From positions 1 through 64,000 of the IMG/VR virus record IMGVR_UViG_3300036770_003657: a DNA stretch of 64,000 nt; one strand, written 5' to 3'. How positions within the stretch are numbered: the stretch's first letter is position 1; the number at the start of each line of letters is the position of its first letter. Below are positions 15,517-28,665 of this stretch, piece by piece. The notes under the pieces were generated by a model. The model was not told the origin of the DNA. It made no database searches and was given only the letters and a program-made list of their open reading frames with translations. The translations under genes were made by a program, and so were the position numbers.

Positions 15517-15522
15517 TATTAT
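15494..15522 (+). promoter_or_regulatory. Sigma70-type promoter (no box)
   Basis: TTGACA-17-TATTAT. Confidence 0.7.
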
Positions 15523-15574
15523 ACGATTATGCACTAATGCATATCAACTCTGTTAAATACGAAAGGCAAATATT

Positions 15575-15958: not shown

Positions 15959-16148
15959 TGAGCTGGGAATTGTACGAAGTAATGGCCACAGATGATCGTG
16001 GCCATGAGTCACTCTACTATGCTACAAAGAGCTTGAAAGAGGCTAAGGCTATGGCCCAACAGGCTCTACGTGAAGGTATGGTGAGTTGCGTAGTGAATAG
16101 AGAGACTGAAGACGGAGACAGTGAGTGCGTCTTCGAGTGTAAATCATA

Positions 16149-16149
<1 letters not shown>
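15958..16149 (+). CDS. Hypothetical protein
   Basis: TAATG coupling; ends at the tRNA 5' end. Confidence 0.65.
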
Positions 16150-16227
<78 letters not shown>

Positions 16228-16243
16228 ACTACAAAGGTAACAT

Positions 16244-16522
16244 ATGGCAAGTAAACTGGACAAGTATCTTAGACCCACAGTGATCTTTGATGTACAGAAT
16301 CCTGAACATAGACAACACTATTTCAACTTCCTAGACACTAGAACTTGGAGTGCCTGTCCCTATCAGTTCATCACAGGCAATAGAGATGACAGCCCAATCT
16401 TGACTGTGGCCATAGAGCATCAATTGCTCAAATATTACAGGGACGCTGACAGAGCCTTGGCCAAGAAGGGTCACAATCTCATAGAAGTGGCCATGCGTGT
16501 GGTGGATGAGGAGCATGTCTAG
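16244..16522 (+). CDS. Hypothetical phage protein
   Basis: RPxVxFDxxNxEHR...WxxCPYQF pattern; AAGG SD. Confidence 0.75.
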   Translation: MASKLDKYLRPTVIFDVQNPEHRQHYFNFLDTRTWSACPYQFITGNRDDSPILTVAIEHQLLKYYRDADRALAKKGHNLIEVAMRVVDEEHV

Positions 16523-16542
16523 ACTGTTGTTTACGTACAACA

Positions 16543-16585
16543 AATACCCACACAAGTTGACAGGACTTTAGAGCTCGCGTATAAT
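16543..16585 (+). promoter_or_regulatory. Boxed early promoter 8, preceded by GTTGTTTACGTACAAC (16526-16541)
   Basis: AATACCC-N7-TTGACA-GGACTTT...TATAAT. Confidence 0.88.
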
Positions 16586-16618
16586 TGCTTTATTAGTTAA
16601 ACAACACAGGGCAATTAA

Positions 16619-16792
16619 ATGCAAAAAGTATATAATTTGTTTTTTTATAACGACAGCAACGAGCGTGAGCACTGGGGTACATACGGCACAAAAGTGGCTG
16701 CTGAGCGGGCCATTGTAGAGACGCAAGAGGAGTTTGGCAGTGACATTTTTGCAACAGAACAGTTTAGCATAGAGACTAGCACAGTAGCATAA
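16619..16792 (+). CDS. Early hypothetical protein (57 aa)
   Basis: Exactly fills the space between boxes 8 and 9. Confidence 0.7.
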   Translation: MQKVYNLFFYNDSNEREHWGTYGTKVAAERAIVETQEEFGSDIFATEQFSIETSTVA

Positions 16793-16833
16793 TACCCACA
16801 GAGGTTGACAGGTCTTTAGAAGGCCTGTATAAT
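16791..16833 (+). promoter_or_regulatory. Boxed early promoter 9
   Basis: AATACCC-N7-TTGACA-GGTCTTTAGAAGGCCTG-TATAAT; spacer identical to boxes 3 and 4. Confidence 0.9.
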
Positions 16834-16862
16834 GCTTGTATAGTAAACAAAAGGAGCGAAAA

Positions 16863-17066
16863 ATGGGATTTGAAAAGCGTGTTATAGAAGTGGTCAGAAC
16901 TGTTACAGACGCAGAAGCACATTTCTATGAGGGTTCACTGTTCCTGCATACAGCAGACAGAGACATAGCAGTGCTGGTCTACAATGCCCTGCGTAAAAGG
17001 GTAACAGGCAGGCTGGCATTTGGTCCTGCAGGCGAATTTGAAACTGTATACGATTTTTTAGCATAA
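16863..17066 (+). CDS. Early hypothetical protein
   Basis: GGAGCGAAA RBS. Confidence 0.75.
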   Translation: MGFEKRVIEVVRTVTDAEAHFYEGSLFLHTADRDIAVLVYNALRKRVTGRLAFGPAGEFETVYDFLA

Positions 17067-17075
17067 GGACTAGAC

Positions 17076-17396
17076 ATGTTAAAATTACATAAGGTAGAAC
17101 AGTTAGAGGATATGATTACTATACGCTTTGACTGTGACTTTTTTGTAACAATGGCTGGAGACGGCTTGTGGGGCTGTGAGGCTGGACGCAAGGTGCGAGT
17201 GTTCACCATAGATGTTAACATAAGAGACAATATGCGAGTTGAGGTCAATGTGGGACACGACAGCAATTGGGATATCTATACTGATACGGCTTTTGAGCGA
17301 GCAATCAGTGATAGGTTAGGCATCCCAGTAGGCTTTACAGAACAGGGTATGCAGGACGACGAGATGGCTAGTATGGAGGCTAAGGTATGCGTATAG
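17076..17396 (+). CDS. Early hypothetical protein
   Basis: GDGLW...IYTD..FE...FTEQGMQ pattern; AAGGA SD. Confidence 0.75.
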   Translation: MLKLHKVEQLEDMITIRFDCDFFVTMAGDGLWGCEAGRKVRVFTIDVNIRDNMRVEVNVGHDSNWDIYTDTAFERAISDRLGIPVGFTEQGMQDDEMASMEAKVCV

Positions 17397-17623
17397 TACA
17401 TGACTATGGACTGGTTAGGGTTGTGAGCTTGGGAGACCCATTTGCTAACACCTACGATATCCGTTGTGAAGTTTATGACGAGGCAGCAGACATTTGGAGG
17501 CTATGGCATGGCTTTAACAGCCTAAGCGATGACTATGCCTACACCAATGCTCGTGAGGCTGCTGGTCGTGCTATAAAGGAGTTGGCCCGACTAAAGGCAG
17601 AGGCACTCGTAGGCGCTAAATAA
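17387..17623 (+). CDS. Early hypothetical protein
   Basis: GGAGG SD; FNSLSDDYAYTNAR. Confidence 0.7.
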   Translation: MRIVHDYGLVRVVSLGDPFANTYDIRCEVYDEAADIWRLWHGFNSLSDDYAYTNAREAAGRAIKELARLKAEALVGAK

Positions 17624-17630
17624 CATCCAA

Positions 17631-17715
17631 GCTCCAATGGCGTAATAGGTAGCCGCACGGGACTTAAAATCCCGGGTCGAGAGGCGTCCCGGTTCGAGTC
17701 CGGGTTGGAGCACCA
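17631..17715 (+). tRNA. tRNA-Leu(TAA)
   Basis: GCTCCAA/TTGGAGC acceptor stem, CGGGA-CTTAAAA-TCCCG arm, long variable arm, CCA. Confidence 0.93.
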
Positions 17716-17718
17716 AAT

Positions 17719-17793
17719 ACCACCGTCGTTCAACGGATAGGACAGGAGTCTTCTAAACTCTAAATGGGGGTTCGATTCCCTCCGGTGGTGCCA
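17719..17793 (+). tRNA. tRNA-Arg(TCT)
   Basis: ACCACCG/CGGTGGT acceptor stem, GGAGT-CTTCTAA-ACTCT arm, GGTTCGA, CCA. Confidence 0.92.
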
Positions 17794-17811
17794 TACAACA
17801 AAGGACAAGAC

Positions 17812-18051
17812 ATGGGTTGGGTTGTATACACAGAACAACATGGACAGATCATCAGGTACTATAAGACATCTGGACCAGCCAAGAGGTTGGTGAACCAGCA
17901 CAATAGACTGGTGGACCAGCGTGGTTTCAGCTGGTCCAAGGGTAAGGTGGCCTGCTGCCCTTTCCCACAGTTCGAAGGTGTGCTCTTGGGCCTACGAGGA
18001 GAAGAACTAAAGATGTGGCAATTTTTCAACAGTAAGGGAATACCCACATAG
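17812..18051 (+). CDS. Early hypothetical protein
   Basis: AAGGA SD; stop inside box 10. Confidence 0.7.
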   Translation: MGWVVYTEQHGQIIRYYKTSGPAKRLVNQHNRLVDQRGFSWSKGKVACCPFPQFEGVLLGLRGEELKMWQFFNSKGIPT

Positions 18052-18081
18052 GTTGACAGGTCTTTGCTTTGATACTATAAT
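18039..18081 (+). promoter_or_regulatory. Boxed early promoter 10
   Basis: AATACCC-N7-TTGACA-GGTCTTT...TATAAT. Confidence 0.9.
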
Positions 18082-18111
18082 ATCTCTATAGTAAACAACA
18101 AGGAGCAGCAA

Positions 18112-18303
18112 ATGGGCTACAAGGTACTAGGCAAGTTTGAAGATGTTATGCAAGGCTTTGGCCCACGCAAAGGTCTAGAAGGTCCCTTCAACTTTAACGG
18201 CCGTGTGTTGTATTACGACAACAAGGAAGGCAAGTACTACGACCCACGTACTGACTTCTATGTCAGTTACGATGAGTGGTTCCAATTAGCAGGTCTTAAG
18301 TAA
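18112..18303 (+). CDS. Conserved small phage protein
   Basis: GLEGPF...GRVLYYDxKEGxYYDPxTDFY; GGAGC RBS. Confidence 0.8.
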   Translation: MGYKVLGKFEDVMQGFGPRKGLEGPFNFNGRVLYYDNKEGKYYDPRTDFYVSYDEWFQLAGLK

Positions 18304-18313
18304 GGAGATTGAC

Positions 18314-18487
18314 ATGATTGAGCGTAATCTAAATGCAGCGGGTCGGAGAGCCAATGTGCTGTTCGGCTTTGTTGAGGTGGTAGACGGCTTGGTCAGAGTA
18401 TTGAGCTTGGGCTTCCTCCACACCCGCCTGTGCCTAATCGTTACCCGTTGGCAAGTCCGTCGGGCTTTCCAAAACCGTAGAGGTTGA
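18314..18487 (+). CDS. Early hypothetical protein (57 aa)
   Basis: AAGGAG SD; stop is the TGA of the next -35. Confidence 0.6.
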   Translation: MIERNLNAAGRRANVLFGFVEVVDGLVRVLSLGFLHTRLCLIVTRWQVRRAFQNRRG

Positions 18488-18512
18488 CACTAGCACCGAA
18501 AGGTGCTATACT
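18470..18512 (+). promoter_or_regulatory. Variant early promoter with spacer hairpin
   Basis: TTGACA-17-TATACT; TAGCACC-GAAA-GGTGCTA replaces the right half-box; leader shared with box 11. Confidence 0.8.
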
Positions 18513-18542
18513 ATGGTTACAGTGAACAACAAGGAGCGGCAA

Positions 18543-18713
18543 ATGGATCAAGCAATCTACGTTATAGAAGGTGTTGGTGAGTACGGCTTGGACCTGGATC
18601 ACAGCCCAGGAGTTGGCGGCTACTATGTCAAACTCTACGATGGATCCTACGATGCCAGTGGCTTTGACACTGAACGAGAAGCACGAGAAGAACTGGAGTA
18701 CCTAACCCAATGA
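18543..18713 (+). CDS. Early hypothetical protein
   Basis: GGAGCG RBS. Confidence 0.7.
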   Translation: MDQAIYVIEGVGEYGLDLDHSPGVGGYYVKLYDGSYDASGFDTEREAREELEYLTQ

Positions 18714-18880
18714 ACACCGAGGAGCAGGAGATCTCTTACTATGTGGTCATAGAGCACGAGGGCGAAACTGCTCGCTTAGAGTGTGCTAGCCTTGAAGAAG
18801 CACAGCGGGTAAGGCAAAGTTTTGTCAACTGGGGTGGCTACCAATCTGTTGAGATTCTCAGCAAAGACCCTACAGGTTGA
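18710..18880 (+). CDS. Early hypothetical protein (56 aa)
   Basis: GGAG SD, ATGA overlap; stop is the TGA of the next -35. Confidence 0.65.
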   Translation: MNTEEQEISYYVVIEHEGETARLECASLEEAQRVRQSFVNWGGYQSVEILSKDPTG

Positions 18881-18905
18881 CAGGGTATTCAAACGGTGCT
18901 ATACT
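18863..18905 (+). promoter_or_regulatory. Boxed early promoter 11
   Basis: AAAGACC-N7-TTGACA-GGGTATT...TATACT. Confidence 0.9.
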
Positions 18906-18935
18906 ATGGTTACAGTGAACAACAAGGAGCAAGAA

Positions 18936-19160
18936 ATGAACGAAAGAATCCGAGAACTTGCTGAACAGGCTGAATGGCGATTTGCCGACCGAGCAACAGG
19001 TAATTTTTCCGAATATGATCAACGATTAGAAAAGTTCGCCGAGTTGATTGTACGGAATTGTATTGTAGACTTTTACAGAAATTACCTAGATACCACTAGT
19101 GATGAAGATATCACCAAGCAGGTTGATAGATATGTAAAACAACAATTTGGAGTTGAATAA
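18936..19160 (+). CDS. Small phage protein, 'EKFAELIV' paralog family, in cassette form
   Basis: MNERIRELAEQA...EKFAELIVRNC...QFGVE. Confidence 0.8.
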   Translation: MNERIRELAEQAEWRFADRATGNFSEYDQRLEKFAELIVRNCIVDFYRNYLDTTSDEDITKQVDRYVKQQFGVE

Positions 19161-19198
19161 CCCTACAGGTTGACAGGTCTTTGGAACGGCACTATAAT
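19156..19198 (+). promoter_or_regulatory. Boxed early promoter 12
   Basis: AATAACC-N7-TTGACA-GGTCTTT...TATAAT. Confidence 0.9.
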
Positions 19199-19227
19199 AG
19201 ACACATAGTAAACAAAAGGAGCGATAG

Positions 19228-19344
19228 ATGAGCAAGTTGGATAGAGTGTTAGATGAACTGTTTTGGTTGGCTCTTTTTGCCATCCCCCCAGTGTTCGTTG
19301 TAACCTGTGTGAGTGGTATTGTTTACGGCCTGTTGTTTAGGTAA
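19228..19344 (+). CDS. 38-aa single-TM micro-protein
   Basis: GGAGCGAT RBS; fills the cassette between boxes 12 and 13. Confidence 0.7.
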   Translation: MSKLDRVLDELFWLALFAIPPVFVVTCVSGIVYGLLFR

Positions 19345-19385
19345 TACCCACATAGGTTGACAGGTCTTTGGAACGGTTGTATAAT
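19343..19385 (+). promoter_or_regulatory. Boxed early promoter 13
   Basis: AATACCC-N7-TTGACA-GGTCTTT...TATAAT. Confidence 0.9.
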
Positions 19386-19472
19386 ATGGTTATAGTAAGC
19401 AAGCAGGGGCGAACAGACAAATTGCTTAGGCAGATGACCCCTGTGGACTTACCCAACATTTAGGAGCAACAA

Positions 19473-19772
19473 ATGGCCAAACTTATGATCCAGACCCAAG
19501 TACTTGAAAACTACGGCACTGAGTTCCGTCCACGCTGGAAAGCCAAAGGAGGCGACGACTATGTGGTACCCAACTTCACCCAATTCAATGACATCCACGC
19601 CGCTATCGATAGCATCAGGCAGCAGATTGAGACCGATAACAGTTTCTACCAGGAGTACATCGTTGACTGGTACGTGGCTGAGGACAACGAACTCACTAAG
19701 TGGGAACAACAGCAACTCGATCTCGACGGCAGGATCATCTACCCGGCAAAAGAGCTGGTGGCTGTAGCCTAA
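19473..19772 (+). CDS. Conserved hypothetical phage protein
   Basis: KLMIQTQVLENY...WKAKGG.DY pattern; GGAGC RBS. Confidence 0.8.
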   Translation: MAKLMIQTQVLENYGTEFRPRWKAKGGDDYVVPNFTQFNDIHAAIDSIRQQIETDNSFYQEYIVDWYVAEDNELTKWEQQQLDLDGRIIYPAKELVAVA

Positions 19773-19782
19773 GGAGCAGACA

Positions 19783-19992
19783 ATGATAGAACTACACGGA
19801 TTGACCCGCAAGCAACGAATCCTAGCGGACACTCTTTGGAACAAATGCCAAAGCCAACAGGAAGTTGACTACATTCTCCAAACCTTTGGAGTGGATGCTC
19901 GTATTGTATACGAGATGATGTTGGCCCACAGCATGGACCAATATACACAAACGGATGAGGCTATGATGGTACTAGAGAGGTTTATGCTATGA
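19783..19992 (+). CDS. Early hypothetical protein
   Basis: AAGGAGC RBS. Confidence 0.7.
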   Translation: MIELHGLTRKQRILADTLWNKCQSQQEVDYILQTFGVDARIVYEMMLAHSMDQYTQTDEAMMVLERFML

Positions 19993-20270
19993 GGGTAGAA
20001 GCCATACACGGTGCAGGCTCCAGTGCTAGGGAGGTCATGATGGAGATGTGGAAGATGTCAATGACCCAGAGACTTATGCAGGACATGAAGAACAGGGTAA
20101 ACGGACAAAGCCGCCATCATAGCCAAGACATTATGGTGAACAGTGTGGGATCAGAGAACATCCATAGCCGTCCAGATAAGGACCGTCCACAGCCAGTTGA
20201 GCCTGCTGTGAAGATACATCTTAGTCCACAGGCCCAACTTATGGCCAAGATCAATACCCACACAGATTGA
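19989..20270 (+). CDS. Early hypothetical protein
   Basis: ATGA overlap; stop is the TGA of the next -35. Confidence 0.6.
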   Translation: MRVEAIHGAGSSAREVMMEMWKMSMTQRLMQDMKNRVNGQSRHHSQDIMVNSVGSENIHSRPDKDRPQPVEPAVKIHLSPQAQLMAKINTHTD

Positions 20271-20295
20271 CAGGTCTTTGGAATGAGTGCATAAT
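20253..20295 (+). promoter_or_regulatory. Boxed early promoter 14
   Basis: AATACCC-N7-TTGACA-GGTCTTT...CATAAT. Confidence 0.88.
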
Positions 20296-20325
20296 ACGAA
20301 CATACTAACACAACGGAGCAACAAG

Positions 20326-20541
20326 ATGCAAACCCTACTAGTTCATACCCTTGTACAATTCATCCTCAAGCGTCGTGCAGACTATCCCAGACATTTTAGC
20401 ATCAAACGAAGTGAACTTAACATTGTGGCATATCATAGTTTGGGTGTGGAGAGCCTCCGTTATATGACTGTGAAGAACTTAGAGACTGTGGCTTCAATGG
20501 TCAATGGTACTTACGAAAAGGCTCGTATAGAGTTCAACTAA
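20326..20541 (+). CDS. Early hypothetical protein
   Basis: GGAGC RBS; stop overlaps box 15. Confidence 0.7.
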   Translation: MQTLLVHTLVQFILKRRADYPRHFSIKRSELNIVAYHSLGVESLRYMTVKNLETVASMVNGTYEKARIEFN

Positions 20542-20582
20542 TACCCACACAGATTGACAGGTCTTTGGAACGAGTGCATAAT
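20540..20582 (+). promoter_or_regulatory. Boxed early promoter 15
   Basis: 50/51-nt identical to box 14 and its first leader bases. Confidence 0.88.
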
Positions 20583-20588
20583 ACGAAC

Positions 20589-20915
20589 ATGAAGACAAAA
20601 CGAACAGCCCGTAAAGACAGCACGTTCATCATCTACGAAGTCGTTGCTAGCGACGGCAACAATTACATTGGACTTACTCGTAAGGGTACTACCACTGTAG
20701 CAAAGGCCGTTGCTGAACGATGGAGAAAGCATAAGAGTCGTGCTCGTAACGAACAGAGAGACTGGGCCCTATACACTCACTTACGCAACGGTGGACTGGA
20801 CATGGAGTGGGAACACAAGATCATAGCCATTGTTAGAGGTCGTGCTGAAGCATATGCACAAGAGCGCTGTGTTGTACGAGAACAACAACCCACACTGAAT
20901 ACACAATACAACTAA
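20589..20915 (+). CDS. GIY-YIG family nuclease (minimal domain), leaderless
   Basis: IIYEV...NYIGLT...ERWRKH...AYAQE...LN; ATG 7 nt after the -10. Confidence 0.8.
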   Translation: MKTKRTARKDSTFIIYEVVASDGNNYIGLTRKGTTTVAKAVAERWRKHKSRARNEQRDWALYTHLRNGGLDMEWEHKIIAIVRGRAEAYAQERCVVREQQPTLNTQYN

Positions 20916-20956
20916 TAACCCTACAGGTTGACAGGGTATTGGAACACTGCTATACT
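20914..20956 (+). promoter_or_regulatory. Boxed early promoter 16
   Basis: AATAACC-N7-TTGACA-GGGTATT...TATACT. Confidence 0.9.
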
Positions 20957-20985
20957 GTTAACACTTAAACACAACGGAGCAACAA

Positions 20986-21321
20986 ATGAGCAAAGACACA
21001 TTAGACATTGTTAAACTTACTGTAGAAGTAGGCCTCAACGTAGCACACAAAGCGGCACAGGACTTCCTCGCTACACACGGGGACAGGGACGCTTGCGGCT
21101 TTGCTTGGGTTACTGTATACGAGAAGGGTAGTACTAAGCTTGGGCGTGCGCTACTCAAGTGTGGCTTCCGTAAGGAGTACGGGGGTGGACTTACTATGTG
21201 GAACCCCAGCGGCTTAGGCGTACAGAGCATCAACGTTAAAGAAGAAGGCGCTGAGGCTTTTGCTAAGTTTATTAGAGAACACTTGGGCGTTAAGGCCTAC
21301 GCACAGAGTAGAATGGATTGA
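20986..21321 (+). CDS. Conserved hypothetical phage protein
   Basis: CGFAWV...QS...KE.GA.AFA...SRMD pattern; GGAGC RBS. Confidence 0.8.
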   Translation: MSKDTLDIVKLTVEVGLNVAHKAAQDFLATHGDRDACGFAWVTVYEKGSTKLGRALLKCGFRKEYGGGLTMWNPSGLGVQSINVKEEGAEAFAKFIREHLGVKAYAQSRMD

Positions 21322-21811: not shown

Positions 21812-22684
21812 TCATACGTAATTTTTAGGGATCAAGTTTCTAAGTAGTTCATCTTCAGGAGTACCGAAATCTGGTTCATAGTTGTATTGCCAACGTACTA
21901 AAGGTGGCATACTCATCAGTATACTTTCAGTACGACCATTGCTCTGTAGACCAAACAGTGTGCCTCTGTCATAGACCAAGTTAAATTCAACATATCTACC
22001 TCTGCGATAAAGTTGCCATTCTCTTTCCCGTTCACCGTAACTCATGTCTAATCTTTGACCAACAATAGGGGCATAGCCTTTCAAAAAAGCATGTCCAGTG
22101 GACTGTACTAACTTACTGCCTAGTTCACTATCAATGTCGTCAAAAAATATGCCACCTATGCCTCTAGCTTCGTTACGATGTTTAAGATGAAAATAATGAT
22201 CACACCATTGTTTATATTTAGGATAGAGGGTAGGATCTATAGGATCTAGTGCCTCTTTACAGGTCTTGTGCCAGTGTACAGCATCTTGTTCATAGTAGTA
22301 ATATGGTGTTAGATCCATGCCACCACCGTACCAACTAGTGCCATCTTCTGTTGTAAACATACGTACATTAGCATGTACAGTGGGAATGTATGGATTACGT
22401 GGGTGTATGACCAAACTCACTCCCATAGCCTCCCAGTGTTGATTGGGGTCAATGGTCCTATGTGCTGTAGCACTTTCTGGTAGTCTAGTTCCCTTAACAT
22501 GGCTAAAGTTAACGCCACCACGTTCGAAAACATTACCGTTTTCTATCAATATACTAGTGCCACCACCACCTTCTGGTCTACGCCAACTATCTGACTTAAA
22601 GGGTCTTCCATCAATGTTTTCCAACCCTTCTACTATTGTTGTTTGTAAGTTTTTAAAAAATTCTAGTGCTTGATCTTTTAACAT
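21812..22684 (-). CDS. hemF: Oxygen-dependent coproporphyrinogen III oxidase
   Basis: [69 protein letters not shown]. Confidence 0.97.
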
Positions 22685-22964: not shown

Positions 22965-23234
22965 ATGAGTACATTTGATGATTTTGATATTGGTAGTAAT
23001 ATTAACAGTGCTGTAATTAAGAGTTACAGTACTGACCTACGTAATCCAGGGAATTTCCTACACACTACCTGTGCTCTGCCTGCCATATATTATGATTTTG
23101 AGGCACAGCGTCGTCACAGTGATAAGTTAAAGATCAATCGTCCCACATTTCGCGAAAGCGGCCCTGGCTATGTATCACCGTCCACGCCACCTCAGCAAGA
23201 AAGTCAAAGTGACGAATCATCAACTCTAGATTAG
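22965..23234 (+). CDS. Hypothetical protein
   Basis: GTAAATA 5 nt upstream; 3' end overlaps a convergent gene by 100 nt. Confidence 0.4.
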   Translation: MSTFDDFDIGSNINSAVIKSYSTDLRNPGNFLHTTCALPAIYYDFEAQRRHSDKLKINRPTFRESGPGYVSPSTPPQQESQSDESSTLD

Positions 23235-23562
23235 TGTCTGGGCCTGTATGTTGTAATAATCTTGTATAGCAGCCTTGTCCTAAGTCTGTATAATAGCTGG
23301 CACTAATGCCTCTGCGTTCTCCAAGTTGTGGGAATACGGCACGAGTAAACCAGCAAGTGTCACCAAGCCATTTTAGAGTAGATGGTGTTCGTGCTGTGAG
23401 ATATTGTTCAGCATAGCTGGGTTCAGGTTGCCAAGGATTTTTATCTACTTTGTTCACCAAAATAGAAACCATTGAGTCTTGTAAACTCTTTGGGATCCGC
23501 CAACCCTGCCTATCTAGGGTTTCAGTAAACAGATCAGAGAAGGCTAGTTCTAGACCTTTCAA
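23134..23562 (-). CDS. Hypothetical protein resembling a bacterial conserved family
   Basis: LGDxxxF...YYxxxGxxxY...FxxLxEV pattern; ATAAATA upstream on the - strand. Confidence 0.6.
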   Translation of the reverse strand: MKGLELAFSDLFTETLDRQGWRIPKSLQDSMVSILVNKVDKNPWQPEPSYAEQYLTARTPSTLKWLGDTCWFTRAVFPQLGERRGISASYYTDLGQGCYTRLLQHTGPDTNLELMIRHFDFLAEVAWTVIHSQGRFREMWDD

Positions 23563-23627
23563 TATATTGCTCTATTCATTTGTATTTATTGATAAGTATG
23601 CTATAATAGCAGATAAGGGAGAATTCT

Positions 23628-23855
23628 ATGAATAAAAATCTAATTACTGAACAATATAATACAGAATCTACTCCTAATAGTAATAACAGCCCTTTGAGCA
23701 CAGGCAGTGATCTTGTGGCCAAGAACCCACAGGACTATGACCTAGTGCGTGTCCTACAGCGCCAAATACAGCAACTTACCCAGGAAATACGTAAACTACA
23801 CAATCGTCATCGTGAACTACACAGTGAGATCGAAAGACTCAAAAGTAGGCAATAA
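23628..23855 (+). CDS. Coiled-coil hypothetical protein
   Basis: GGGAG SD; heptad-rich C-terminus. Confidence 0.6.
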   Translation: MNKNLITEQYNTESTPNSNNSPLSTGSDLVAKNPQDYDLVRVLQRQIQQLTQEIRKLHNRHRELHSEIERLKSRQ

Positions 23856-23862
23856 ATACTAT

Positions 23863-24294
23863 ATGATATTCAATTTATATGCTGTATTAAAATGGTTTGA
23901 GCGCACTTGGCGATTTTGGGTAGCTTTAGTATTTGTGTTCAATGTGGCCTATATCATACATAATTATAGATTAGCCACAGTTCCAGTACCAGTTCAGCCA
24001 CAGATCATTGAACCAGTGGAGGATAAACAAGACCAATTAGACATGTTGATTAAACGCATTGATGCATTGGAAAAGCGTATTGAAGACCAGCAAAAAGTTA
24101 TCTCATGGTATGACACCTATAAGCAAGCCAATGAAACTAATTTCAAACGATTGGACAAGAATCAGCAAAATCAAATTGATGTTCTCAAACGCATGTGTGA
24201 ATACATATGGGTAATCACCATAGATAAGAAAATTGTTCCTAGACAGTGTTATCCAGAGTATAACTGGCGTAGGGAAGAAATACGTGGAAACTAA
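23863..24294 (+). CDS. Membrane-anchored coiled-coil protein
   Basis: ATAAATA at 23852 then ATG 23863; TM helix FWVALVFVFNVAYII. Confidence 0.65.
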   Translation: MIFNLYAVLKWFERTWRFWVALVFVFNVAYIIHNYRLATVPVPVQPQIIEPVEDKQDQLDMLIKRIDALEKRIEDQQKVISWYDTYKQANETNFKRLDKNQQNQIDVLKRMCEYIWVITIDKKIVPRQCYPEYNWRREEIRGN

Positions 24295-25513
24295 ATTAGC
24301 CACTATAGTATGCAGTGATGTAATTGGTTATAGCACATTGATGCAGAGAGATGAAGCAGGAACATTGGCCAAGTTAGATGCTTGCCGTGCTGTAATTGAT
24401 CCCTTAATAGACTCAAGTAAAGGGCGTCTATTTAATACAGGAGGAGACAGTGTACTCATTGAGTTTGCCAGCGCAGTTGATGCTGTTCGCTTTGGTATAG
24501 AAATGCAGGCACGTATTCGTAAACTTAATAATGGTATGCGTTGGCGTATAGGCATGCACATGGGTGAAGTATGGATATATGGTACCAACCTAATGGGTGA
24601 TGCCGTTAACTTAGCCGCCCGTACAGAAAGCCTTGCTGATCTGGGTGGTGTCACTATGACTGATGCTGTGTATAGGCTAGTCAGTCCAAAAATTAAGGAT
24701 CATAAGTTTATAAGCCGTGGAGTACAAGAGTTTAAAAATGTAGATCCCATGGAAATATTCAGTGTGGAAATTGAGGGCAGTGAGCCCAATCCTAATCTCA
24801 GTAAGAGTAAGAAAAAGGTTGAATTATCTAACACTAAATCACATGCCGAGTTGATCAGTGCTGTAGTAAATGATCAAGCAGCCCGTAATCGTACACTCAA
24901 CGATGCTATCTCATTTAAACATGACGGTAAGTATGGTCCAGCCACACGTATCATGATGTGGCGTGTTGGCAAACAGGACAAGCAGGCATTAGATGAATTA
25001 ATTAACATGGTGCAAAAGGATCTAGTACCAAAAGAACTAGAACCCTATGTATTTGCAGTGTTTAGAGAGTTTTGCACCAAGATTGACAGTGAAACAGCCA
25101 TACGCATAGTAGACCTAGTACAAGATCAAAGTCGTAGTTTAGCCATGCAGTTTCTAAGGCAAGCAGCCAAGGTAAATGAACAGGCCAGTTATCGTTTGGC
25201 CATGATGGTGTTCAACGATCCTAACAGCAGTGACAGCGAAATAGACAGTATCTTAGGTGATCTTAGAGAAAGTGCCATGAAACGAAAGGTTCCAGCAATG
25301 ATAAGTCTTGGACAATATTATACACAGATAGGTGATAAGAAAAATGCGTTTCGTTGGCTCTATACTGCCCGTGCTGAACATAATACTGAAGCACAGAAAT
25401 TATTAGAAGATTTAATTAAGACAATAAGTAAGAGTGAATTTAATAATTTCAAGACTGACGCAGATGCTCTAGTTGATGAAATTAAATTCATTGATAACAA
25501 CAGAATGAAATGA
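24284..25513 (+). CDS. Class III adenylate/guanylate cyclase with C-terminal Sel1/TPR-like helical repeats
   Basis: IVCSDVIGYS, GGDSVL, RIGMHMGEV, GDAVNLAARTES; GTG start at 24284 inferred. Confidence 0.85.
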   Translation: METKLATIVCSDVIGYSTLMQRDEAGTLAKLDACRAVIDPLIDSSKGRLFNTGGDSVLIEFASAVDAVRFGIEMQARIRKLNNGMRWRIGMHMGEVWIYGTNLMGDAVNLAARTESLADLGGVTMTDAVYRLVSPKIKDHKFISRGVQEFKNVDPMEIFSVEIEGSEPNPNLSKSKKKVELSNTKSHAELISAVVNDQAARNRTLNDAISFKHDGKYGPATRIMMWRVGKQDKQALDELINMVQKDLVPKELEPYVFAVFREFCTKIDSETAIRIVDLVQDQSRSLAMQFLRQAAKVNEQASYRLAMMVFNDPNSSDSEIDSILGDLRESAMKRKVPAMISLGQYYTQIGDKKNAFRWLYTARAEHNTEAQKLLEDLIKTISKSEFNNFKTDADALVDEIKFIDNNRMK

Positions 25514-25725
25514 TAGTTATATATAGCATATATTTTGTTTTTCTAGTTTACGGACTAGTTCTTTTTATTACAGGATTTGCCACACTACCCAAAGAGGTAA
25601 GACAAAGCCTTAACCCTGCTGAGATTGAACAATTTGATAATGAAATGACTCAAAGACAAATAGTAGGAATTCTATTACTATTTGTTCCCGTTTTCAGTTT
25701 TATTTGGTGGTTGATTATTAATTAA
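25510..25725 (+). CDS. Two-TM membrane protein
   Basis: Two hydrophobic helices; ATGA-coupled to the cyclase. Confidence 0.65.
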   Translation: MIVIYSIYFVFLVYGLVLFITGFATLPKEVRQSLNPAEIEQFDNEMTQRQIVGILLLFVPVFSFIWWLIIN

Positions 25726-25995
25726 GTCATCAAACTGTTCAGTTTCTTTTTCAATACGTTCACCTCTAAGTTCCATAACAGTTTCAACTTTTTGATTTAA
25801 TCTAATTAAGTCGTTGTCTAACATGCGTACACGATCAATTAGTTCAAGTAGAGTGTCATTGGCTTGACCTATAACTGGTTTAATTTCTTTAGTAACCCAA
25901 TTCCAAATATACCATATCAATGCGCCCAAGCAGCCACTAAACACTATGGGAAATCCATATTTATTGATAAAAGTGACTATGTCGTTTGGGTTCAC
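25678..25995 (-). CDS. TM + coiled-coil protein (paralog B)
   Basis: GFPIV...WYIW TM; LIDRVRMLDNDLIRLNQKV. Confidence 0.7.
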   Translation of the reverse strand: MNPNDIVTFINKYGFPIVFSGCLGALIWYIWNWVTKEIKPVIGQANDTLLELIDRVRMLDNDLIRLNQKVETVMELRGERIEKETEQFDDLINNQPPNKTENGNK

Positions 25996-26279
25996 TAGTC
26001 TTTTCTCTTATCTTTTATTTCTGATCTACTTAAACGATCATAGTCAGGTTTTAGACCAAGAGCAGTACTTACTTTAACATCAATCTGTATAAGTTGACTG
26101 GTCATAGTGTATACCCTATGATCTAGCCTTTTGATAGTGTTACCCATGCCAGTAATGCTACTAGTCACACCTGCTAGGATAAACTTAATTGTAAGATAGA
26201 CAAAATAAAAGGCCACAATACTGGCAGCAATAGGGCTACCTATTTCCAATAATTGTGTAATTAAACCGATCTCGTCCAT
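25995..26279 (-). CDS. TM + coiled-coil protein (paralog A)
   Basis: GSPIA...FVYL TM; LDHRVYTMTSQLIQIDVKV; GTAAATA upstream. Confidence 0.7.
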   Translation of the reverse strand: MDEIGLITQLLEIGSPIAASIVAFYFVYLTIKFILAGVTSSITGMGNTIKRLDHRVYTMTSQLIQIDVKVSTALGLKPDYDRLSRSEIKDKRKD

Positions 26280-26317
26280 ATTGTATTTACGGACAAAATC
26301 GGTAGTATTAAGTGCTA

Positions 26318-27727
26318 TTAGATATCTTCAGTGTTTAAATTATTCAGCAAGTCACGTAGTTTAGTATTTGATACTTGAACTTGTGAATTTTTAACACTAA
26401 TACCTTGAGTTGGGTCATCTCTTTGTGCCATACTGCGCTGTCTAATATTATCTAGTACAGCCTGTCCACCTTTATATTCAGGAACTTCTCCATCTTCAAG
26501 ATCTCTAATTCTCAAGGTATCAATATCAAATTCTAAGTCAATGTTTTGTCCTACGCCGCTTGAGCTACGTGTCTTAAGTAGCTGTATTTGATAGCGTCCT
26601 TTCTCTCTCCAACTACGACTAGTAAAGATACCAAATACATTATCAGCAGTTTGAATTTTACTAAGTCCACCACTAATATGACTATGATCAAAGCTGATTT
26701 CTTCTACTGCGCTTCTATTCAATTGTGCCGCAGTGACCAGTATAACGTTCTTTTCTACTGCTAAATTTCTAAGTTCTTCGGATACGAACTTATCTTTAAT
26801 AAACAAGTTTTCAGCACTAATCTTACGACTAATTGGCATCAACAAGTCCAAATAATCTACTAATAATATATCAATACGTTTGCCAGTCTTAACTTCATAT
26901 TCTTTCATAAAACTTCGTATGTCATTTGTTGTTTTACCACTGGGCATATATTTTATTTGGAACTGCCCACTCTTTTTACCCATGACACGAACTTTCATTT
27001 CAATGTCATCAATTTGTTTAAAAATTTCTCTAGTAGGTATATCAGTAATCATACTATCAATACGCATACTAACAAGTTCTTCAGCAAGCTCTAATGTTAA
27101 GTATACTACATTAAGTCCAGCAAGGCTCCAATTTAATCCTAGATTAGCTAGGAATAAACTTTTACCAGCACCACTACCACCAGCAAAAATATTAAGCTCA
27201 CCTCTGTTAAATCCGCCAAACAATTTTTGATCTAGAGCACGCCAACCTGTACTAATTTGTCCGTTTTTATCTTTAATACGCATTAACCTACTACGTGGAT
27301 CTTCATAGTAGTTTGTACCCATATCCTTTTGTAGACCAATCTGTACTGCCTTCTTAATTAAATCTTCTACTGGTCCATATTCACCTTGTTCAAGCAAATC
27401 AGCACTGGCTAGGATGGCACGTTCAAGACCTTTGTGTTTAATAAAAGTTTCAAAGTCTTGTAATAGCCAATCATAATGTTCCTCACGTAAGTCGGTTGGT
27501 TTGATAAAGTCACTCTTGGTGGCAGCATTTACAATTTCATATGTAGGTAGTATGTTGTGTTCTATAACATAGTCATTAATAAATTTTGCTGTAGTTTGTA
27601 GTCGTCTATCAAATAGTTCATGATCAAAGATACTTTGACATCTTACAAATGTTTCAGCATCACTGAGCATGAGCTCAAGATAAAGTTTTTGTATATCATA
27701 TCCATAGTCTGCGTTTTGTTTTGTCAT
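26318..27727 (-). CDS. Replicative DnaB/gp41-like DNA helicase
   Basis: Walker A GGSGAGKS, YLTLEL, VDYLDL, TAAQLNR, KTR. Confidence 0.93.
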   Translation of the reverse strand: MTKQNADYGYDIQKLYLELMLSDAETFVRCQSIFDHELFDRRLQTTAKFINDYVIEHNILPTYEIVNAATKSDFIKPTDLREEHYDWLLQDFETFIKHKGLERAILASADLLEQGEYGPVEDLIKKAVQIGLQKDMGTNYYEDPRSRLMRIKDKNGQISTGWRALDQKLFGGFNRGELNIFAGGSGAGKSLFLANLGLNWSLAGLNVVYLTLELAEELVSMRIDSMITDIPTREIFKQIDDIEMKVRVMGKKSGQFQIKYMPSGKTTNDIRSFMKEYEVKTGKRIDILLVDYLDLLMPISRKISAENLFIKDKFVSEELRNLAVEKNVILVTAAQLNRSAVEEISFDHSHISGGLSKIQTADNVFGIFTSRSWREKGRYQIQLLKTRSSSGVGQNIDLEFDIDTLRIRDLEDGEVPEYKGGQAVLDNIRQRSMAQRDDPTQGISVKNSQVQVSNTKLRDLLNNLNTEDI

Positions 27728-27744: not shown

Positions 27745-28665
27745 TTAGGTTTTAATTTCAAGATGTTTGACAGGATTCCATTGGTAATCCCATAGTCTAT
27801 TTTTAGTATGATATAGCACTGCGCCTATAGCACTGCTAGGATCACCAGGCATAGGCAAGCTCCATACATACTGCCAATGATTTTTTAATAGTTGATTATA
27901 CTTACTGTTCATAGCACATCCGCCCATATAGACCAAACTGTCACTTCCAGTAAGTTCTTTGGCCTTACGCATAATTGTGTCTACTTCTAATTCAAATACA
28001 AATTGTACAGCAGCAGCAATATCTTTATGGTCTTCAGGATTTATAGTATAGGGCCAGTCTCTTACACCTTTATGTAGATTGGTGTTATATCTTCTTAGTA
28101 CATCATTTAAATATCGATTTCTATCACCCTGTACGCTTAATTGTTGTAGTAAGTATTCTTCTTTTATAGGTCGAAGTTGTATTAGATCAGTGAATGCACT
28201 ATAGAAAAGTCCTAGACTAGTGGGGTATCTATTACTCCATAATTTTGTAATTTCTCCATGTTTACCTTCCCATATGCTCATAGTATCCCATTCACCTATA
28301 GCATCAAGTACCACAATAGCACAATGATTAAATGGACTTGTATAGTATCCAGCAGCAGCATGACTAGCGTGATGTGGAGTATAGGTAATAGGAGCTGTGA
28401 TTTTATTGGCTTTTAGGTATAATTTAGGAATCGCCTTAAAATCAAAAACTCTACGCCATTGTCCAGCATAGACTTGACGAGTTTTCTTAATCCAAGGTCT
28501 TTCATACCAATAAATTTTATCTGGCTTATATTTGAATTCAAAATATTCTAAATCAAGTTTAGGTATTTCATCATCTGTAAAAAATTGCCAATGAACTAGA
28601 TTGTCATGTTGAAAGATAGCTATGCTGCTTCCATGATTTAAACAGTTTAACCCCCAAGTAATCAT
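27745..28665 (-). CDS. NodU/CmcH-family carbamoyltransferase, N-terminal Kae1-like domain only
   Basis: HHASHAAAGYYTSPF, VLDAIGE, SLGLFYS, GGCAMN, GDPSSAIGA. Confidence 0.85.
   Translation of the reverse strand: MITWGLNCLNHGSSIAIFQHDNLVHWQFFTDDEIPKLDLEYFEFKYKPDKIYWYERPWIKKTRQVYAGQWRRVFDFKAIPKLYLKANKITAPITYTPHHASHAAAGYYTSPFNHCAIVVLDAIGEWDTMSIWEGKHGEITKLWSNRYPTSLGLFYSAFTDLIQLRPIKEEYLLQQLSVQGDRNRYLNDVLRRYNTNLHKGVRDWPYTINPEDHKDIAAAVQFVFELEVDTIMRKAKELTGSDSLVYMGGCAMNSKYNQLLKNHWQYVWSLPMPGDPSSAIGAVLYHTKNRLWDYQWNPVKHLEIKT

What the first reader, a model, noticed from the sequence alone, without database searches (positions are those of the whole stretch)
23852..26290. Phage-encoded class III nucleotidyl cyclase module flanked by four membrane proteins
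Seen: TAAATA motif, then TM/coiled-coil gene, cyclase with Sel1-like repeats, and 2-TM gene (overlapping starts/stops), converging on two paralogous TM/coiled-coil genes with their own TAAATA. Both metal-binding Asp and the NxAAR motif are intact, but the usual adenine-specifying Lys position reads Asn (FNTGGD). Established: Pycsar couples a class III cyclase to a TM effector, and cAMP drives CRP regulons. Inference: a phage cyclic-nucleotide signalling unit for superinfection sensing, lysis timing or host reprogramming, possibly with a non-cAMP product.
Basis: partly seen in the sequence, partly recalled or inferred. Interest (0 to 1): 0.6.

Follow-up and report, generated by a model that had tools for sequence, protein, structure and literature searches.

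The report
Phage adenylyl-cyclase module with membrane partners
A 400-kb freshwater jumbo phage carries an intact, strongly conserved cyclic-nucleotide synthase next to a pair of small membrane proteins that, across hundreds of aquatic phages, almost never occur without such a cyclase, which points to a little-studied phage signalling module that probably makes cAMP late in infection.

Summary
Window 24284-25513(+) encodes a 409-aa class III nucleotidyl cyclase. Both metal Asp, the transition-state Asn/Arg and the phosphate Lys are intact. It is fused to a C-terminal Sel1/TPR-like helical solenoid. It is flanked by g2 (TM + coiled coil), g4 (2 TM) and a convergent pair of paralogous TM/coiled-coil genes, g6 then g5 (phrog_18771).

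The cyclase family is abundant: at least 341 close homologues, dN/dS about 0.07, all from aquatic phage contigs. Asn at the adenine-specifying Lys position (N51), and Asn at the partner Asp position (N102), are the commonest pair in this cyclase subfamily. Rv1900c, deposited as an adenylyl cyclase, also has Asn at the Lys position. So cAMP remains the likeliest product.

The neighbours differ in how firmly they are linked:
- **g2 and g4** are lineage-variable add-ons.
- **The g6/g5 pair** lies next to a cyclase in 69 of 80 viral loci, either the CHASE2 type or this Sel1-like type, with or without the published pelagiphage curli (T8SS) genes.
- **The reverse does not hold:** a complete 150-kb phage has this cyclase without the pair.

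A late-promoter-like TAAATA motif precedes both units. The Pycsar analogy fails: no cNMP-binding effector and only a weak PycC match. Verdict: a new variant of a partly described phage cyclase module. Its biological role is unresolved.

The parts
23628..23855 (+). g1: 75-aa coiled-coil protein without a TM segment. It lies directly upstream of the cyclase unit, just outside the finding's start.
   Evidence: ORF, with only weak coiled-coil Pfam hits. Conserved at 58-80% identity upstream of the cyclase in the jumbo-phage relatives L004-L011, L019 and L023, and a g1-like 75-aa ORF lies upstream of the cyclase in L062.
23853..23858 (+). TAAATA, a T4-type late-promoter-like motif (context AATAAATA), 4 nt before the g2 ATG.
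   Evidence: Sequence. The same motif sits 10-12 nt before the cyclase ATG in relatives that lack g2 (L004, L009, L011, L015, L019, L027, L033, L118), and also in L022. TAAATA is depleted genome-wide (373 observed, 793 expected), and half of the TAAATA-N3-6-ATG sites open ORFs of at least 50 aa. Promoter function is inferred.
23863..24294 (+). g2: 143-aa membrane protein with an N-terminal hydrophobic segment (residues 20-38), a coiled-coil region and a conserved Cys-containing C-terminus. Its stop overlaps the cyclase start by 11 nt.
   Evidence: It is absent from the closest relatives. g2-like genes (34-57% identity, same C-terminal motif, same overlap with the cyclase start) lie directly upstream of the cyclase in L012, L013, L014 and L034, and upstream (41%, separated by a short gap) in L022, in a different gene order. 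dN/dS is about 0.3. There is a weak Rz-like spanin PHROG hit, E 0.008.
24284..25513 (+). Class III nucleotidyl cyclase, 409 aa, GTG start. The catalytic domain covers residues 1-161 (24284-24766), a low-confidence linker covers 162-186, and a Sel1/TPR-like helical solenoid covers 187-409 (24842-25510). Key residues: D12, N51 (24434-24436), D55 (24446-24448), N102 (24587-24589), N109, R113, K151.
   Evidence: PF00211 at 36 bits. PDB phmmer hits: 3mr7 at E 1.7e-21, then Rv1900c and Ma1120. The AF2 model has pLDDT 80.2, and Foldseek matches Ma1120, 3mr7 and Rv1900c with target TM-score (TMt) 0.71-0.86. The C-domain model has pLDDT 92.9 and hits Sel1-repeat proteins. 341 homologues were found, the best 120 at 75-96% identity. 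Invariant residues are listed. dN/dS is 0.07-0.08.
25510..25725 (+). g4: 71-aa protein with two TM segments. Its ATG overlaps the cyclase stop (ATGA), and its 3' end overlaps g5 by 48 nt.
   Evidence: It is conserved downstream of the cyclase in the jumbo lineage (68-94% identity), and at 31-77% in other gene orders (L015, L016, L026, L028, L031, L143). It is absent from many cyclase loci. dN/dS is 0.18. No Pfam family.
25678..25995 (-). g5 (type A of the phrog_18771 pair): 105 aa, with one aromatic-rich hydrophobic segment and a C-terminal coiled coil. GTG start, overlapping the g6 stop by 1 nt.
   Evidence: phrog_18771 at E 1e-26. More than 548 viral stretches encode relatives. It contains an invariant block D-R-x-R-x-L-D-N-D-x-I-R. 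Homologues are HTVC008M gp012 and Melnitz gene 98. dN/dS is 0.06-0.12.
25995..26279 (-). g6 (type B of the pair): 94 aa, with an acidic N-terminus, one TM segment (residues 17-35) and a coiled-coil C-terminal part.
   Evidence: phrog_18771 at E 3e-22. Paralogous to g5 (hhalign 97.8%). A type B gene lies upstream of type A in 79 of 80 loci, always in the order B then A. Homologues are HTVC008M gp011 and Melnitz gene 97.
26284..26289 (-). TAAATA late-promoter-like motif, 4 nt before the g6 start.
   Evidence: Sequence. TAAATA occurs within 45 nt upstream of the type B gene in 58 of 71 distinct viral loci. Function is inferred.

Best explanation
The locus is the jumbo-phage version of an accessory module found widely in aquatic myoviruses, probably expressed late. 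The module joins a class III cyclase to a pair of paralogous single-pass membrane proteins.

**The enzyme.** It is a soluble cyclase of 409 aa. The catalytic domain is closest to the Ma1120, Rv1900c and 3mr7 group of bacterial adenylyl cyclases and keeps every catalytic residue. It should therefore work as a head-to-tail homodimer that turns a purine NTP, most probably ATP, into a 3',5'-cyclic nucleotide. A minor cGMP activity is possible.

**Regulation.** The C-terminal Sel1/TPR-like solenoid is a protein-binding, regulatory part. In the related CHASE2-type phage cyclases, a membrane sensor domain takes that place.

**Timing and output.** Both convergent units (g2-cyclase-g4, and g6-g5) carry a T4-type late-promoter-like motif next to the start codon, so the signal is probably made late in infection. 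The phage encodes no cNMP-binding protein, so the cyclic nucleotide is probably read by host receptors of the CRP/cNMP-binding type.

**The membrane proteins.** The g6/g5 pair depends evolutionarily on having a cyclase nearby, but the cyclase does not depend on the pair. The pair is therefore best read as a membrane-level modulator or client of the cyclase signal. g2 and g4 are lineage-specific membrane add-ons, translationally coupled to the cyclase.

**Shown:** gene structure, family, catalytic residues, fold, purifying selection, gene-neighbourhood statistics.

**Inferred:** product, dimer, late timing, host receptor, and any physical contact with the membrane proteins.
For: **Enzyme identity**
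- Family and residues.
- Fold.
- N/N is the commonest specificity pair among the nearest 147 cluster representatives. It is also present in the Rhodobacteraceae and Burkholderiaceae homologues.
- Rv1900c has Asn at the Lys position and is deposited as an adenylyl cyclase.
- The only full-length cellular homologue (34% identity, in a Burkholderiaceae MAG between rpoN and other chromosomal genes) is followed by a cNMP-binding protein, PF00027 at E 1e-19.

**Selection and abundance**
- 341 homologues, and dN/dS of 0.07.

**The module**
- 69 of 80 loci with the g5/g6 pair have a cyclase downstream: 59 convergent as here, 10 co-directional, 25 without any curli gene.
- 10 of the 11 exceptions are cut by contig ends.
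- In 50,697 isolate-phage records the pair occurs in 6, and all 6 have a cyclase. Only 3 other records have such a cyclase.
- The Sel1-type cyclase occupies the 'AC' slot of a curli module in L118, and lies beside the pair in L062 and L073.

**Timing and receptor**
- Late motif.
- No cNMP-binding, FecR, CsgG or DUF3307 gene in the phage genome.

**Asymmetry**
- A complete 149.6-kb phage has the cyclase but no type A gene. The positive control for that search worked.
Against: - No biochemical datum exists for any member, and the canonical Lys/Asp pair is absent, so the product is not proven.
- Co-folding of the cyclase with g6 and g5 gave no verdict (score 0.00).
- No RNA data exist for the locus, so late expression rests on a 6-nt motif.
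- The g5/g6-cyclase association could partly reflect shared ancestry of the phages sampled. The several rearrangements and two cyclase types argue against that, but no phylogenetically independent contrast was computed.
- The host is unknown, so the presence of a host cAMP receptor is assumed.
Confidence: 0.55

Rival explanations
1. Lysis-timing or superinfection device. g6/g5, perhaps with g2 and g4, are holin/antiholin-like or spanin-like late membrane proteins. The cyclase is a sensor that tunes when they act, so the output is the phage's own membrane proteins rather than host regulators.
For: - The proteins are small, with a single TM segment and a coiled coil, and carry late-promoter-like motifs.
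- The nearest named neighbours in the ESM Atlas are small membrane proteins including Holin_BhlA, at a score of 0.85, which is a lead only.
- g2 has a weak Rz-like spanin hit, E 0.008.
- In L118 a GH19 hydrolase follows the cyclase.
- Published speculation holds that the neighbouring phage curli pore regulates lysis (PMC9004378).
- The CHASE2-type partner cyclases have an extracytoplasmic sensor domain.
Against: - None of the four proteins has a cNMP-binding domain or a significant holin or spanin match.
- The pair is absent from nearly all other T4-like marine phage isolates, so it is not their general holin.
- No endolysin of the two families searched (PF00182, PF00959) was found in this genome, though the PF00182 search rang in no control genome.
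- The cyclase also occurs without the pair.
Confidence: 0.2
2. Stand-alone auxiliary gene. The cyclase acts alone on host physiology, and the membrane genes are merely neighbours in a variable region, with no functional coupling.
For: - g2 and g4 come and go.
- The 55-62-aa TM/coiled-coil gene that flanks the cyclase in the about 150-kb phages occurs in 37 of 68 loci without any cyclase, and is not homologous to g5.
- A complete phage has the cyclase but no g5-type gene.
- The complex prediction gave no support (this is not evidence either way).
Against: - The g5/g6 pair is almost never found without a cyclase, across at least five arrangements and two cyclase architectures.
- The start/stop overlaps of g2-cyclase-g4 are conserved in unrelated gene orders.
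Confidence: 0.2
3. Pycsar-like abortive-infection or exclusion system. The cyclase makes a pyrimidine or other non-canonical cyclic nucleotide that activates a TM effector, killing the cell when a competing phage enters.
For: - A cyclase lies next to small TM proteins.
- The Lys/Asp specificity pair is replaced by Asn/Asn.
- There is a weak PADLOC PycC hit, E 1.3e-4.
Against: - The PycC match covers only 67 residues of a generic cyclase core.
- No Pycsar cyclase appears among the PDB sequence hits or among the Foldseek matches listed, all of which are adenylyl or guanylyl cyclases.
- No neighbour has a cNMP-binding domain, and nothing in the 400-kb genome has one.
- N/N is the subfamily norm.
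- The full-length cellular homologue lies beside a cNMP-binding-domain (PF00027) protein.
Confidence: 0.06

Closest known systems
Pelagiphage / Melnitz curli (T8SS) region with 'HK', FecR and adenylate cyclase (Wittmers et al. 2022, PMC9599517; Buchholz et al. 2022, PMC9004378; phages HTVC008M and Melnitz)
   Same: - The same pair of small paralogous membrane proteins, in the same order: g6/g5 correspond to HTVC008M gp011/gp012 and Melnitz genes 97/98, at 39-52% identity. These are very probably the short, paralogous 'HK' genes of that paper.
- A class III cyclase lies close by.
- A late-promoter-like motif lies upstream of the pair.
- Relatives of this very cyclase family sit in the 'AC' slot of such a region (L118).
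   Different: - This genome has no CsgG and no FecR, and CsgF was not searched for here.
- The cyclase is a soluble Sel1/TPR-fusion type. The published one is the membrane-bound CHASE2 type; the two show only marginal pairwise similarity, E 0.004 over 66 residues.
- The orientation is convergent.
- The host environment is freshwater or subsurface, and the phage is a 400-kb jumbo phage.
- The 'histidine kinase' label is not borne out: there is no HisKA or HATPase_c match and no conserved His.
Bacterial class III adenylyl cyclases of the Ma1120 / Rv1900c / 3mr7 group
   Same: - The same fold (Foldseek target TM-score 0.71-0.86) and the best sequence matches.
- Metal-binding Asp residues and the Asn/Arg transition-state pair are present.
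- The adenine-Lys is replaced by Asn, as in Rv1900c.
- The nearest cellular catalytic domains are alphaproteobacterial (Rhodobacteraceae, SAR116), with the same G-R-L-F-N-T-G-G-D motif.
   Different: - It is phage-encoded.
- It is fused to a helical solenoid found in only about a dozen 50%-identity clusters, all metagenomic. The one exception found in a genome collection is a Burkholderiaceae MAG homologue.
- The second specificity residue is also Asn.
Pycsar (PycC cyclase + TM or TIR effector)
   Same: A class III-like cyclase is encoded beside small membrane proteins.
   Different: - There is only a weak, partial PycC HMM match.
- There is no effector with a cyclic-nucleotide-binding domain.
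- It lies in a lytic-type jumbo phage among replication genes, not in a bacterial defence island.

Membership tests
Class III nucleotidyl cyclase (PF00211) | Significant match to the catalytic-domain profile, and the cyclase fold | tested here: met
   PF00211 scores 36 bits against a cut-off of 21.9, and 37.6 bits in the genome scan. Foldseek matches to Ma1120, Rv1900c and 3mr7 have probability 1.00 and TMt 0.71-0.86.
Class III nucleotidyl cyclase (PF00211) | Two metal-binding Asp, the transition-state Asn and Arg, and a phosphate-binding Lys | tested here: met
   D12, D55, N109, R113 and K151 are invariant in 32 homologues and align with the corresponding residues of 3mr7 and Rv1900c.
Class III nucleotidyl cyclase (PF00211) | Canonical adenine-specifying Lys/Asp pair (or Glu/Cys for guanine) | tested here: not met
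   The pair is N51/N102, against K101/D157 of Ma1120. N/N is nevertheless the commonest pair among the nearest 147 representatives. This feature defines specificity, not family membership.
Class III nucleotidyl cyclase (PF00211) | Catalytic dimer and measured cyclase activity | not testable with these tools
   No homodimer job was run, and activity needs an enzyme assay.
Pycsar | Cyclase belonging to the PycC clade | tested here: not met
   PADLOC PycC gives E 1.3e-4 and 19 bits, covering residues 71-137 only. No Pycsar cyclase appears among the PDB sequence hits or the listed Foldseek matches.
Pycsar | Adjacent effector with a cyclic-nucleotide-binding domain fused to TM helices or TIR | tested here: not met
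   g1, g2, g4, g5 and g6 have no cNMP_binding or TIR match. PF00027 is absent from the whole 399,796-bp genome.
Phage curli/T8SS region with 'HK', FecR and AC (pelagiphage type) | Pair of small paralogous membrane proteins ('HK') upstream | tested here: met
   g6/g5 are homologous to HTVC008M gp011/gp012 and Melnitz genes 97/98, in the same B-then-A order.
Phage curli/T8SS region with 'HK', FecR and AC (pelagiphage type) | Adenylate cyclase within the region | tested here: met
   A cyclase lies next to the pair, but it is the Sel1-fusion type rather than the CHASE2 type. The same Sel1 type sits in the AC slot in L118.
Phage curli/T8SS region with 'HK', FecR and AC (pelagiphage type) | CsgG/CsgF pore genes, curlin repeats and FecR | tested here: not met
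   PF03783 (CsgG) and PF04773 (FecR) have no match in the genome. 25 of the 80 loci that carry the pair also lack these genes.
Sel1-like repeat (SLR) proteins | Match to the Sel1 repeat profile | tested here: inconclusive
   No Sel1 hit for the window protein. A 39%-identical relative, P0127, gives Sel1 at E 9e-4, below the cut-off. phmmer links residues 327-375 to a 1501-aa TPR/Sel1 repeat protein.
Sel1-like repeat (SLR) proteins | Alpha-solenoid of paired helices resembling solved SLR proteins | tested here: inconclusive
   The 13-helix model has pLDDT 92.9. The top Foldseek hits are LpnE, AlgK, c5321 and Oxalobacter Sel1 proteins, but at E 4e-3 to 7e-3 and TM 0.39-0.48, and TPR proteins score almost equally.
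Holin / antiholin | Small late membrane protein with a significant match to a holin family, or adjacency to an endolysin | tested here: not met
   Only sub-threshold leads were found: phrog_4898 holin at E 0.025, and Atlas Holin_BhlA at 0.85. No lysozyme of PF00959 or PF00182 was found in the genome, though the PF00182 control did not ring.

The most novel reading that the evidence does not exclude
The g6/g5 pair plus a class III cyclase, of either architecture, is the invariant core of a previously unrecognised phage membrane-signalling system. The published curli/T8SS genes would then be only an optional output. In this system the phage makes a cyclic nucleotide late in infection, under control of the membrane pair, to time lysis or respond to superinfection or extracellular cues. 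That would be a cyclic-nucleotide counterpart of T4 lysis inhibition.
Probability: 0.25. Interest if true: 0.8.

Novelty: new variant of a known kind. Interest (0 to 1): 0.58.

Why it matters
Cyclic-nucleotide signalling in phage-host conflict is so far known mainly on the defence side (CBASS, Pycsar, type III CRISPR). Phage-encoded adenylyl cyclases have been noted only in passing, as part of the pelagiphage curli region.

The comparisons made here show three things:
- A soluble Sel1-fusion cyclase family is abundant and under strong purifying selection in freshwater phages, including jumbo phages.
- The conserved partner of phage cyclases is not the curli machinery. It is a pair of small paralogous membrane proteins of unknown function, found in more than 500 viral contig stretches.
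- The dependence runs one way: the pair needs a cyclase, but the cyclase does not need the pair.

This turns a vague annotation ('HK ... AC') into a testable two-component hypothesis. Cultured phage-host systems that carry the module already exist: HTVC008M with Pelagibacter, and Melnitz with OM43. If the product is cAMP acting on host receptors, this would be a clear case of a lytic phage rewiring a global host regulator late in infection.

Tried and rejected
**Searches that came back empty or uninformative**
- DNA and protein searches of the locus and the cyclase against 50,697 isolate-phage records found no match. g2 found none either.
- Co-folding of the cyclase with g6 and g5 gave no verdict (score 0.00, controls not run). 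It is not evidence for or against binding.
- The sigma-70 promoter and terminator scan of 23000-26500 found no more sites than shuffled sequence.
- Only DNA metagenomes (subsurface, lake, freshwater) hold the stretch and there are no RNA runs.
- Rfam over the window found only three tRNAs and no riboswitch near the module.
- A profile of the g5 family against PDB sequences gave nothing below E 0.3. Pfam at E up to 10 gave nothing credible for g4, g5 or g6.
- Cluster look-ups of the nearest cyclase relatives returned no organism names.
- Searches of the genome for GH19 and T4-type lysozyme were empty, and the GH19 control did not ring, so that absence is not informative.

**Ideas considered and dropped**
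- The 55-62-aa TM/coiled-coil gene that flanks the cyclase in about 150-kb phages was tested as a possible homologue of g5. hhalign gave probability 0.4%, and the gene occurs without a cyclase in 37 of 68 loci. It is a backbone gene, not a partner.
- The cyclase as a recent horizontal import into unrelated phages was rejected. The 'other' backbones share many genes with this genome at similar identity.

**Literature checks that failed**
- The Rv1900c paper (PMC549627) is not held.
- The Q/N specificity pair of Rv0386 is from my own memory. Only the paper's existence was confirmed, through a reference list.

Full report
**Setting.** The window is the first 64 kb of a 399,796-bp IMG/VR virus record that CheckV rates complete. 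Its gp41-like helicase (26318-27727, minus strand) is about 52% identical to those of the jumbo phages PA5oct and Atu_ph07. Primase, a carbamoyltransferase and a coproporphyrinogen oxidase lie nearby. Near-identical DNA is held only in subsurface, lake and freshwater metagenomes, and no RNA run holds it.

**Anatomy.**
- On the plus strand: g1 (23628-23855, coiled coil); then TAAATA at 23853-23858; then g2 (23863-24294, one hydrophobic segment, coiled coil, two Cys near the C-terminus); then the cyclase (24284-25513); then g4 (25510-25725, two strong TM segments).
- The g2 stop overlaps the cyclase start by 11 nt. The cyclase stop overlaps the g4 start as ATGA.
- On the minus strand, converging on g4 with a 48-nt overlap: TAAATA at 26284-26289; then g6 (26279-25995); then g5 (25995-25678). 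The g6 stop and g5 start share one base.
- The cyclase start is GTG 24284, not the TTG at 24233 or the internal ATG used by the public gene call (390 aa, P0002). Homologues are 408-412 aa and begin M-[EDNQ]-T-K-L-A-T-I. The shorter call would remove the first metal-binding Asp.

**The cyclase.**
- It matches PF00211 above the curated cut-off.
- Its best solved relatives by sequence are 3mr7 (Silicibacter pomeroyi, E 1.7e-21), Rv1900c and Ma1120.
- An AlphaFold model (pLDDT 80.2) superposes on Ma1120, 3mr7 and Rv1900c with target TM-scores (TMt) of 0.71-0.86. All the Foldseek matches listed are adenylyl or guanylyl cyclases.
- In a 32-sequence alignment, D12, D55, N109, R113 and K151 are invariant.
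N51 aligns with K101 of Ma1120 and with the Lys of 3mr7. The partner position (D157 of Ma1120) is also Asn, N102.
- This is not a phage peculiarity. Among the 147 nearest 50%-identity cluster representatives that align there, the pairs are N/N 39, N/D 36, G/N 21 and K/D 19.
- Rv1900c, whose PDB entries are titled adenylyl cyclase, has Asn at the Lys position.
- From memory, marked as such: Rv0386 with a Gln/Asn pair is also an adenylyl cyclase with guanylyl side activity. Only the existence of that paper was confirmed.
- The nearest cellular catalytic domains carry the same G-R-L-F-N-T-G-G-D motif. They come from marine Alphaproteobacteria: Rhodobacteraceae including HIMB11, and SAR116.
- The single full-length cellular homologue (34% identity, N/N) lies in a Burkholderiaceae MAG, downstream of flhB and rpoN. 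It is immediately followed by a 195-aa cNMP-binding protein, PF00027 at E 1e-19. That context fits classical cAMP or cGMP signalling.
- cAMP is therefore the most probable product. This is an inference.

**The C-terminal domain.** Residues 187-409 were folded alone with a more diverse alignment and gave a 13-helix solenoid at pLDDT 92.9.
- The best PDB matches are Sel1-like repeat proteins (LpnE, AlgK, c5321, Oxalobacter SLR proteins). They are followed closely by TPR proteins, at weak scores (E 4e-3, TM about 0.48).
- Pfam Sel1 is not reached. A relative gives a sub-threshold hit, and residues 327-375 match a long TPR/Sel1 repeat protein 16 times.
- 'Sel1-like' is therefore a fair description of the fold class, not a family assignment.
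- Full-length relatives (cyclase plus this domain) form only about a dozen 50%-identity clusters, all from metagenomes.

**Abundance and selection.**
- The word search found 341 homologues, and the best 120 are 75-96% identical.
- 27 viral contigs carry the cyclase.
- dN/dS against relatives is 0.07-0.08 for the cyclase, 0.18 for g4, 0.06-0.13 for g5/g6 and about 0.3 for g2. Synonymous sites are near saturation.

- *Closest relatives.* Jumbo-type contigs with hemF, the 142-aa gene, g1, DnaB and primase in the same order keep g1, g4, g5 and g6 but lack g2. There the TAAATA motif sits directly before the cyclase ATG.
- *Related phages with a different gene order.* They share many other genes with this genome at 65-78% identity. 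The cyclase is preceded by a g2-like gene in five loci; in the three examined (L012-L014) the C-terminal motif and the overlap with the cyclase start are the same. In other loci it is followed by a g4-like gene. Many loci have neither. g2 and g4 are thus optional, translationally coupled add-ons.
- *The small flanking gene in those phages.* The cyclase there always abuts a 55-62-aa TM/coiled-coil gene. That gene is not homologous to g5 (hhalign probability 0.4%) and occurs without a cyclase in 37 of 68 loci. It is a backbone gene beside which the cyclase sits.

**The g6/g5 pair is different.**
- Both genes match phrog_18771 and are paralogues.
- They have orthologues, in the same B-then-A order, in Pelagibacter phage HTVC008M (gp011/gp012) and Methylophilales phage Melnitz.
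- In those phages the pair opens the published curli/T8SS region, which ends in a CHASE2-type adenylate cyclase.
[quoted passage not shown] They call the HK genes short, divergent and paralogous (PMC9599517). These are very probably the g6/g5 family.
- I find no HisKA or HATPase_c match and no conserved His in either family.
- A scan of IMG/VR with a g5 profile gave more than 548 confirmed stretches.
- In the best 80 loci, 79 have the B gene upstream and 69 have a class III cyclase downstream: 66 CHASE2-type and 3 of the window's type. L073 has both and was counted under the CHASE2 type.
- By orientation, 59 are convergent as in the window and 10 are co-directional. 25 have no curli, CsgF/G or FecR gene at all.
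- Of the 11 loci without a cyclase, 10 end within 4.3 kb downstream of the pair.
- In 50,697 isolate-phage records, both genes of the pair occur in the same six, and all six have the cyclase. Only three other records have such a cyclase.
- The window's cyclase type also occurs beside the pair in more distant phages: L062 at 49% identity, directly convergent with no g4; and L073 at 47%, next to a CHASE2 cyclase.
- It also sits in the 'AC' slot of a full curli region in L118, at 36% identity.
- The present genome has no CsgG, FecR or DUF3307.
- The conserved core is therefore the pair plus a cyclase, and the curli genes are facultative.
- The dependence is asymmetric. A complete 149.6-kb phage with terminal repeats has the cyclase but no g5-type gene, and the same search found the gene in two positive controls.

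**Timing.**
- TAAATA lies within 45 nt upstream of the B gene in 58 of 71 distinct loci. It lies 10-12 nt before the cyclase ATG in nine lineages. It resembles the T4-type late promoter TATAAATA (established knowledge).
- In this genome the hexamer is half as frequent as expected (373 against 793). 30 of the 60 TAAATA-N3-6-ATG sites open ORFs of at least 50 aa.
- I infer late transcription with very short or no leaders. No transcript data exist to test this.

**How it most likely works.** The cyclase dimerises and makes cAMP late in infection. The solenoid domain mediates regulation by a protein partner. The membrane pair, with predicted N-out/C-in topology from charge distribution (inference), modulates or uses the signal. 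The phage has no cNMP-binding domain, so host receptors read it.
- A co-folding test of the cyclase with g6 and g5 gave no verdict.
- The Pycsar analogy fails its two defining tests.
- A role in lysis timing or superinfection response remains possible, but rests only on weak leads.

**Novelty.** Phage adenylate cyclases in the pelagiphage curli region are published. The following appear not to be described in the papers searched:
- the soluble Sel1-fusion family in freshwater and jumbo phages;
- the recognition that the small membrane pair, not the curli machinery, is the constant partner;
- the one-way dependence of the pair on the cyclase.

I rate the finding as a new variant of a known kind and of moderate to good interest.

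Noticed in passing
window 23853-23865, 26277-26289, 7751, 22965, 37100; whole genome G000: TAAATA lies only 3-6 nt before start codons of about 30 ORFs of at least 50 aa. The hexamer is depleted two-fold genome-wide (373 observed, 793 expected). This suggests T4-type late promoters that give leaderless or nearly leaderless mRNAs in this phage group.
   Followed up: partly
window 24341-25513 (public gene call P0002, 390 aa): The database gene call for the cyclase starts at an internal ATG and would remove the first metal-binding Asp (D12). Homologues support the GTG start at 24284.
   Followed up: yes
L188:5001-7102 (Burkholderiaceae MAG contig CANJBQ010000020.1): This is the only full-length homologue of the Sel1-fusion cyclase found in genome contigs, the collection of GTDB species-representative genomes. 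It lies downstream of flhB and rpoN and is directly followed by a stand-alone cNMP-binding protein. It may be a cellular prototype of the family, and a weak hint at the host group.
   Followed up: partly
L118:8004-10669: A CHASE2-type cyclase appears split into a CHASE2 ORF (332 aa) and a cyclase ORF (360 aa) by an inserted 195-aa ORF. The N-terminus of that ORF looks like a GIY-YIG homing endonuclease.
   Followed up: no
L117:5620-5991, L118:719-1090, L119:5971-6342: A DUF3307 membrane protein (123 aa) lies next to distant members of the Sel1-fusion cyclase family, or at the head of the curli region, in three different contigs. It is absent from the window's genome.
   Followed up: partly
window 21812-22684 (-): A complete coproporphyrinogen III oxidase (hemF-like, Pfam E 8e-123) is encoded by the phage, an auxiliary haem-biosynthesis gene. 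It is conserved in the related jumbo-phage contigs.
   Followed up: no
window 27745-28665 (-): The carbamoyltransferase-like gene is only 306 aa (N-terminal domain match). Relatives L009 and L011 have 484-486-aa versions at the same place. It may be truncated or a domain-only form.
   Followed up: no
window 10000-21000: This segment has 43-47% G+C, against 29-35% in most of the rest of the window (beyond about 26 kb). It has few ORFs over 100 aa and three tRNA genes (Met-CAT 16149-16227, Leu-TAA 17631-17715, Arg-TCT 17719-17793).
   Followed up: no
window 52843-63513 (-): A giant ORF of 3,556 aa. The frame stays open to the window end, giving 3,718 aa if read from there.
   Followed up: no
window 25678-25725: The convergent genes g4 and g5 overlap by 48 nt at their 3' ends. 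A similar overlap (57 nt) is kept in relatives such as L004.
   Followed up: partly
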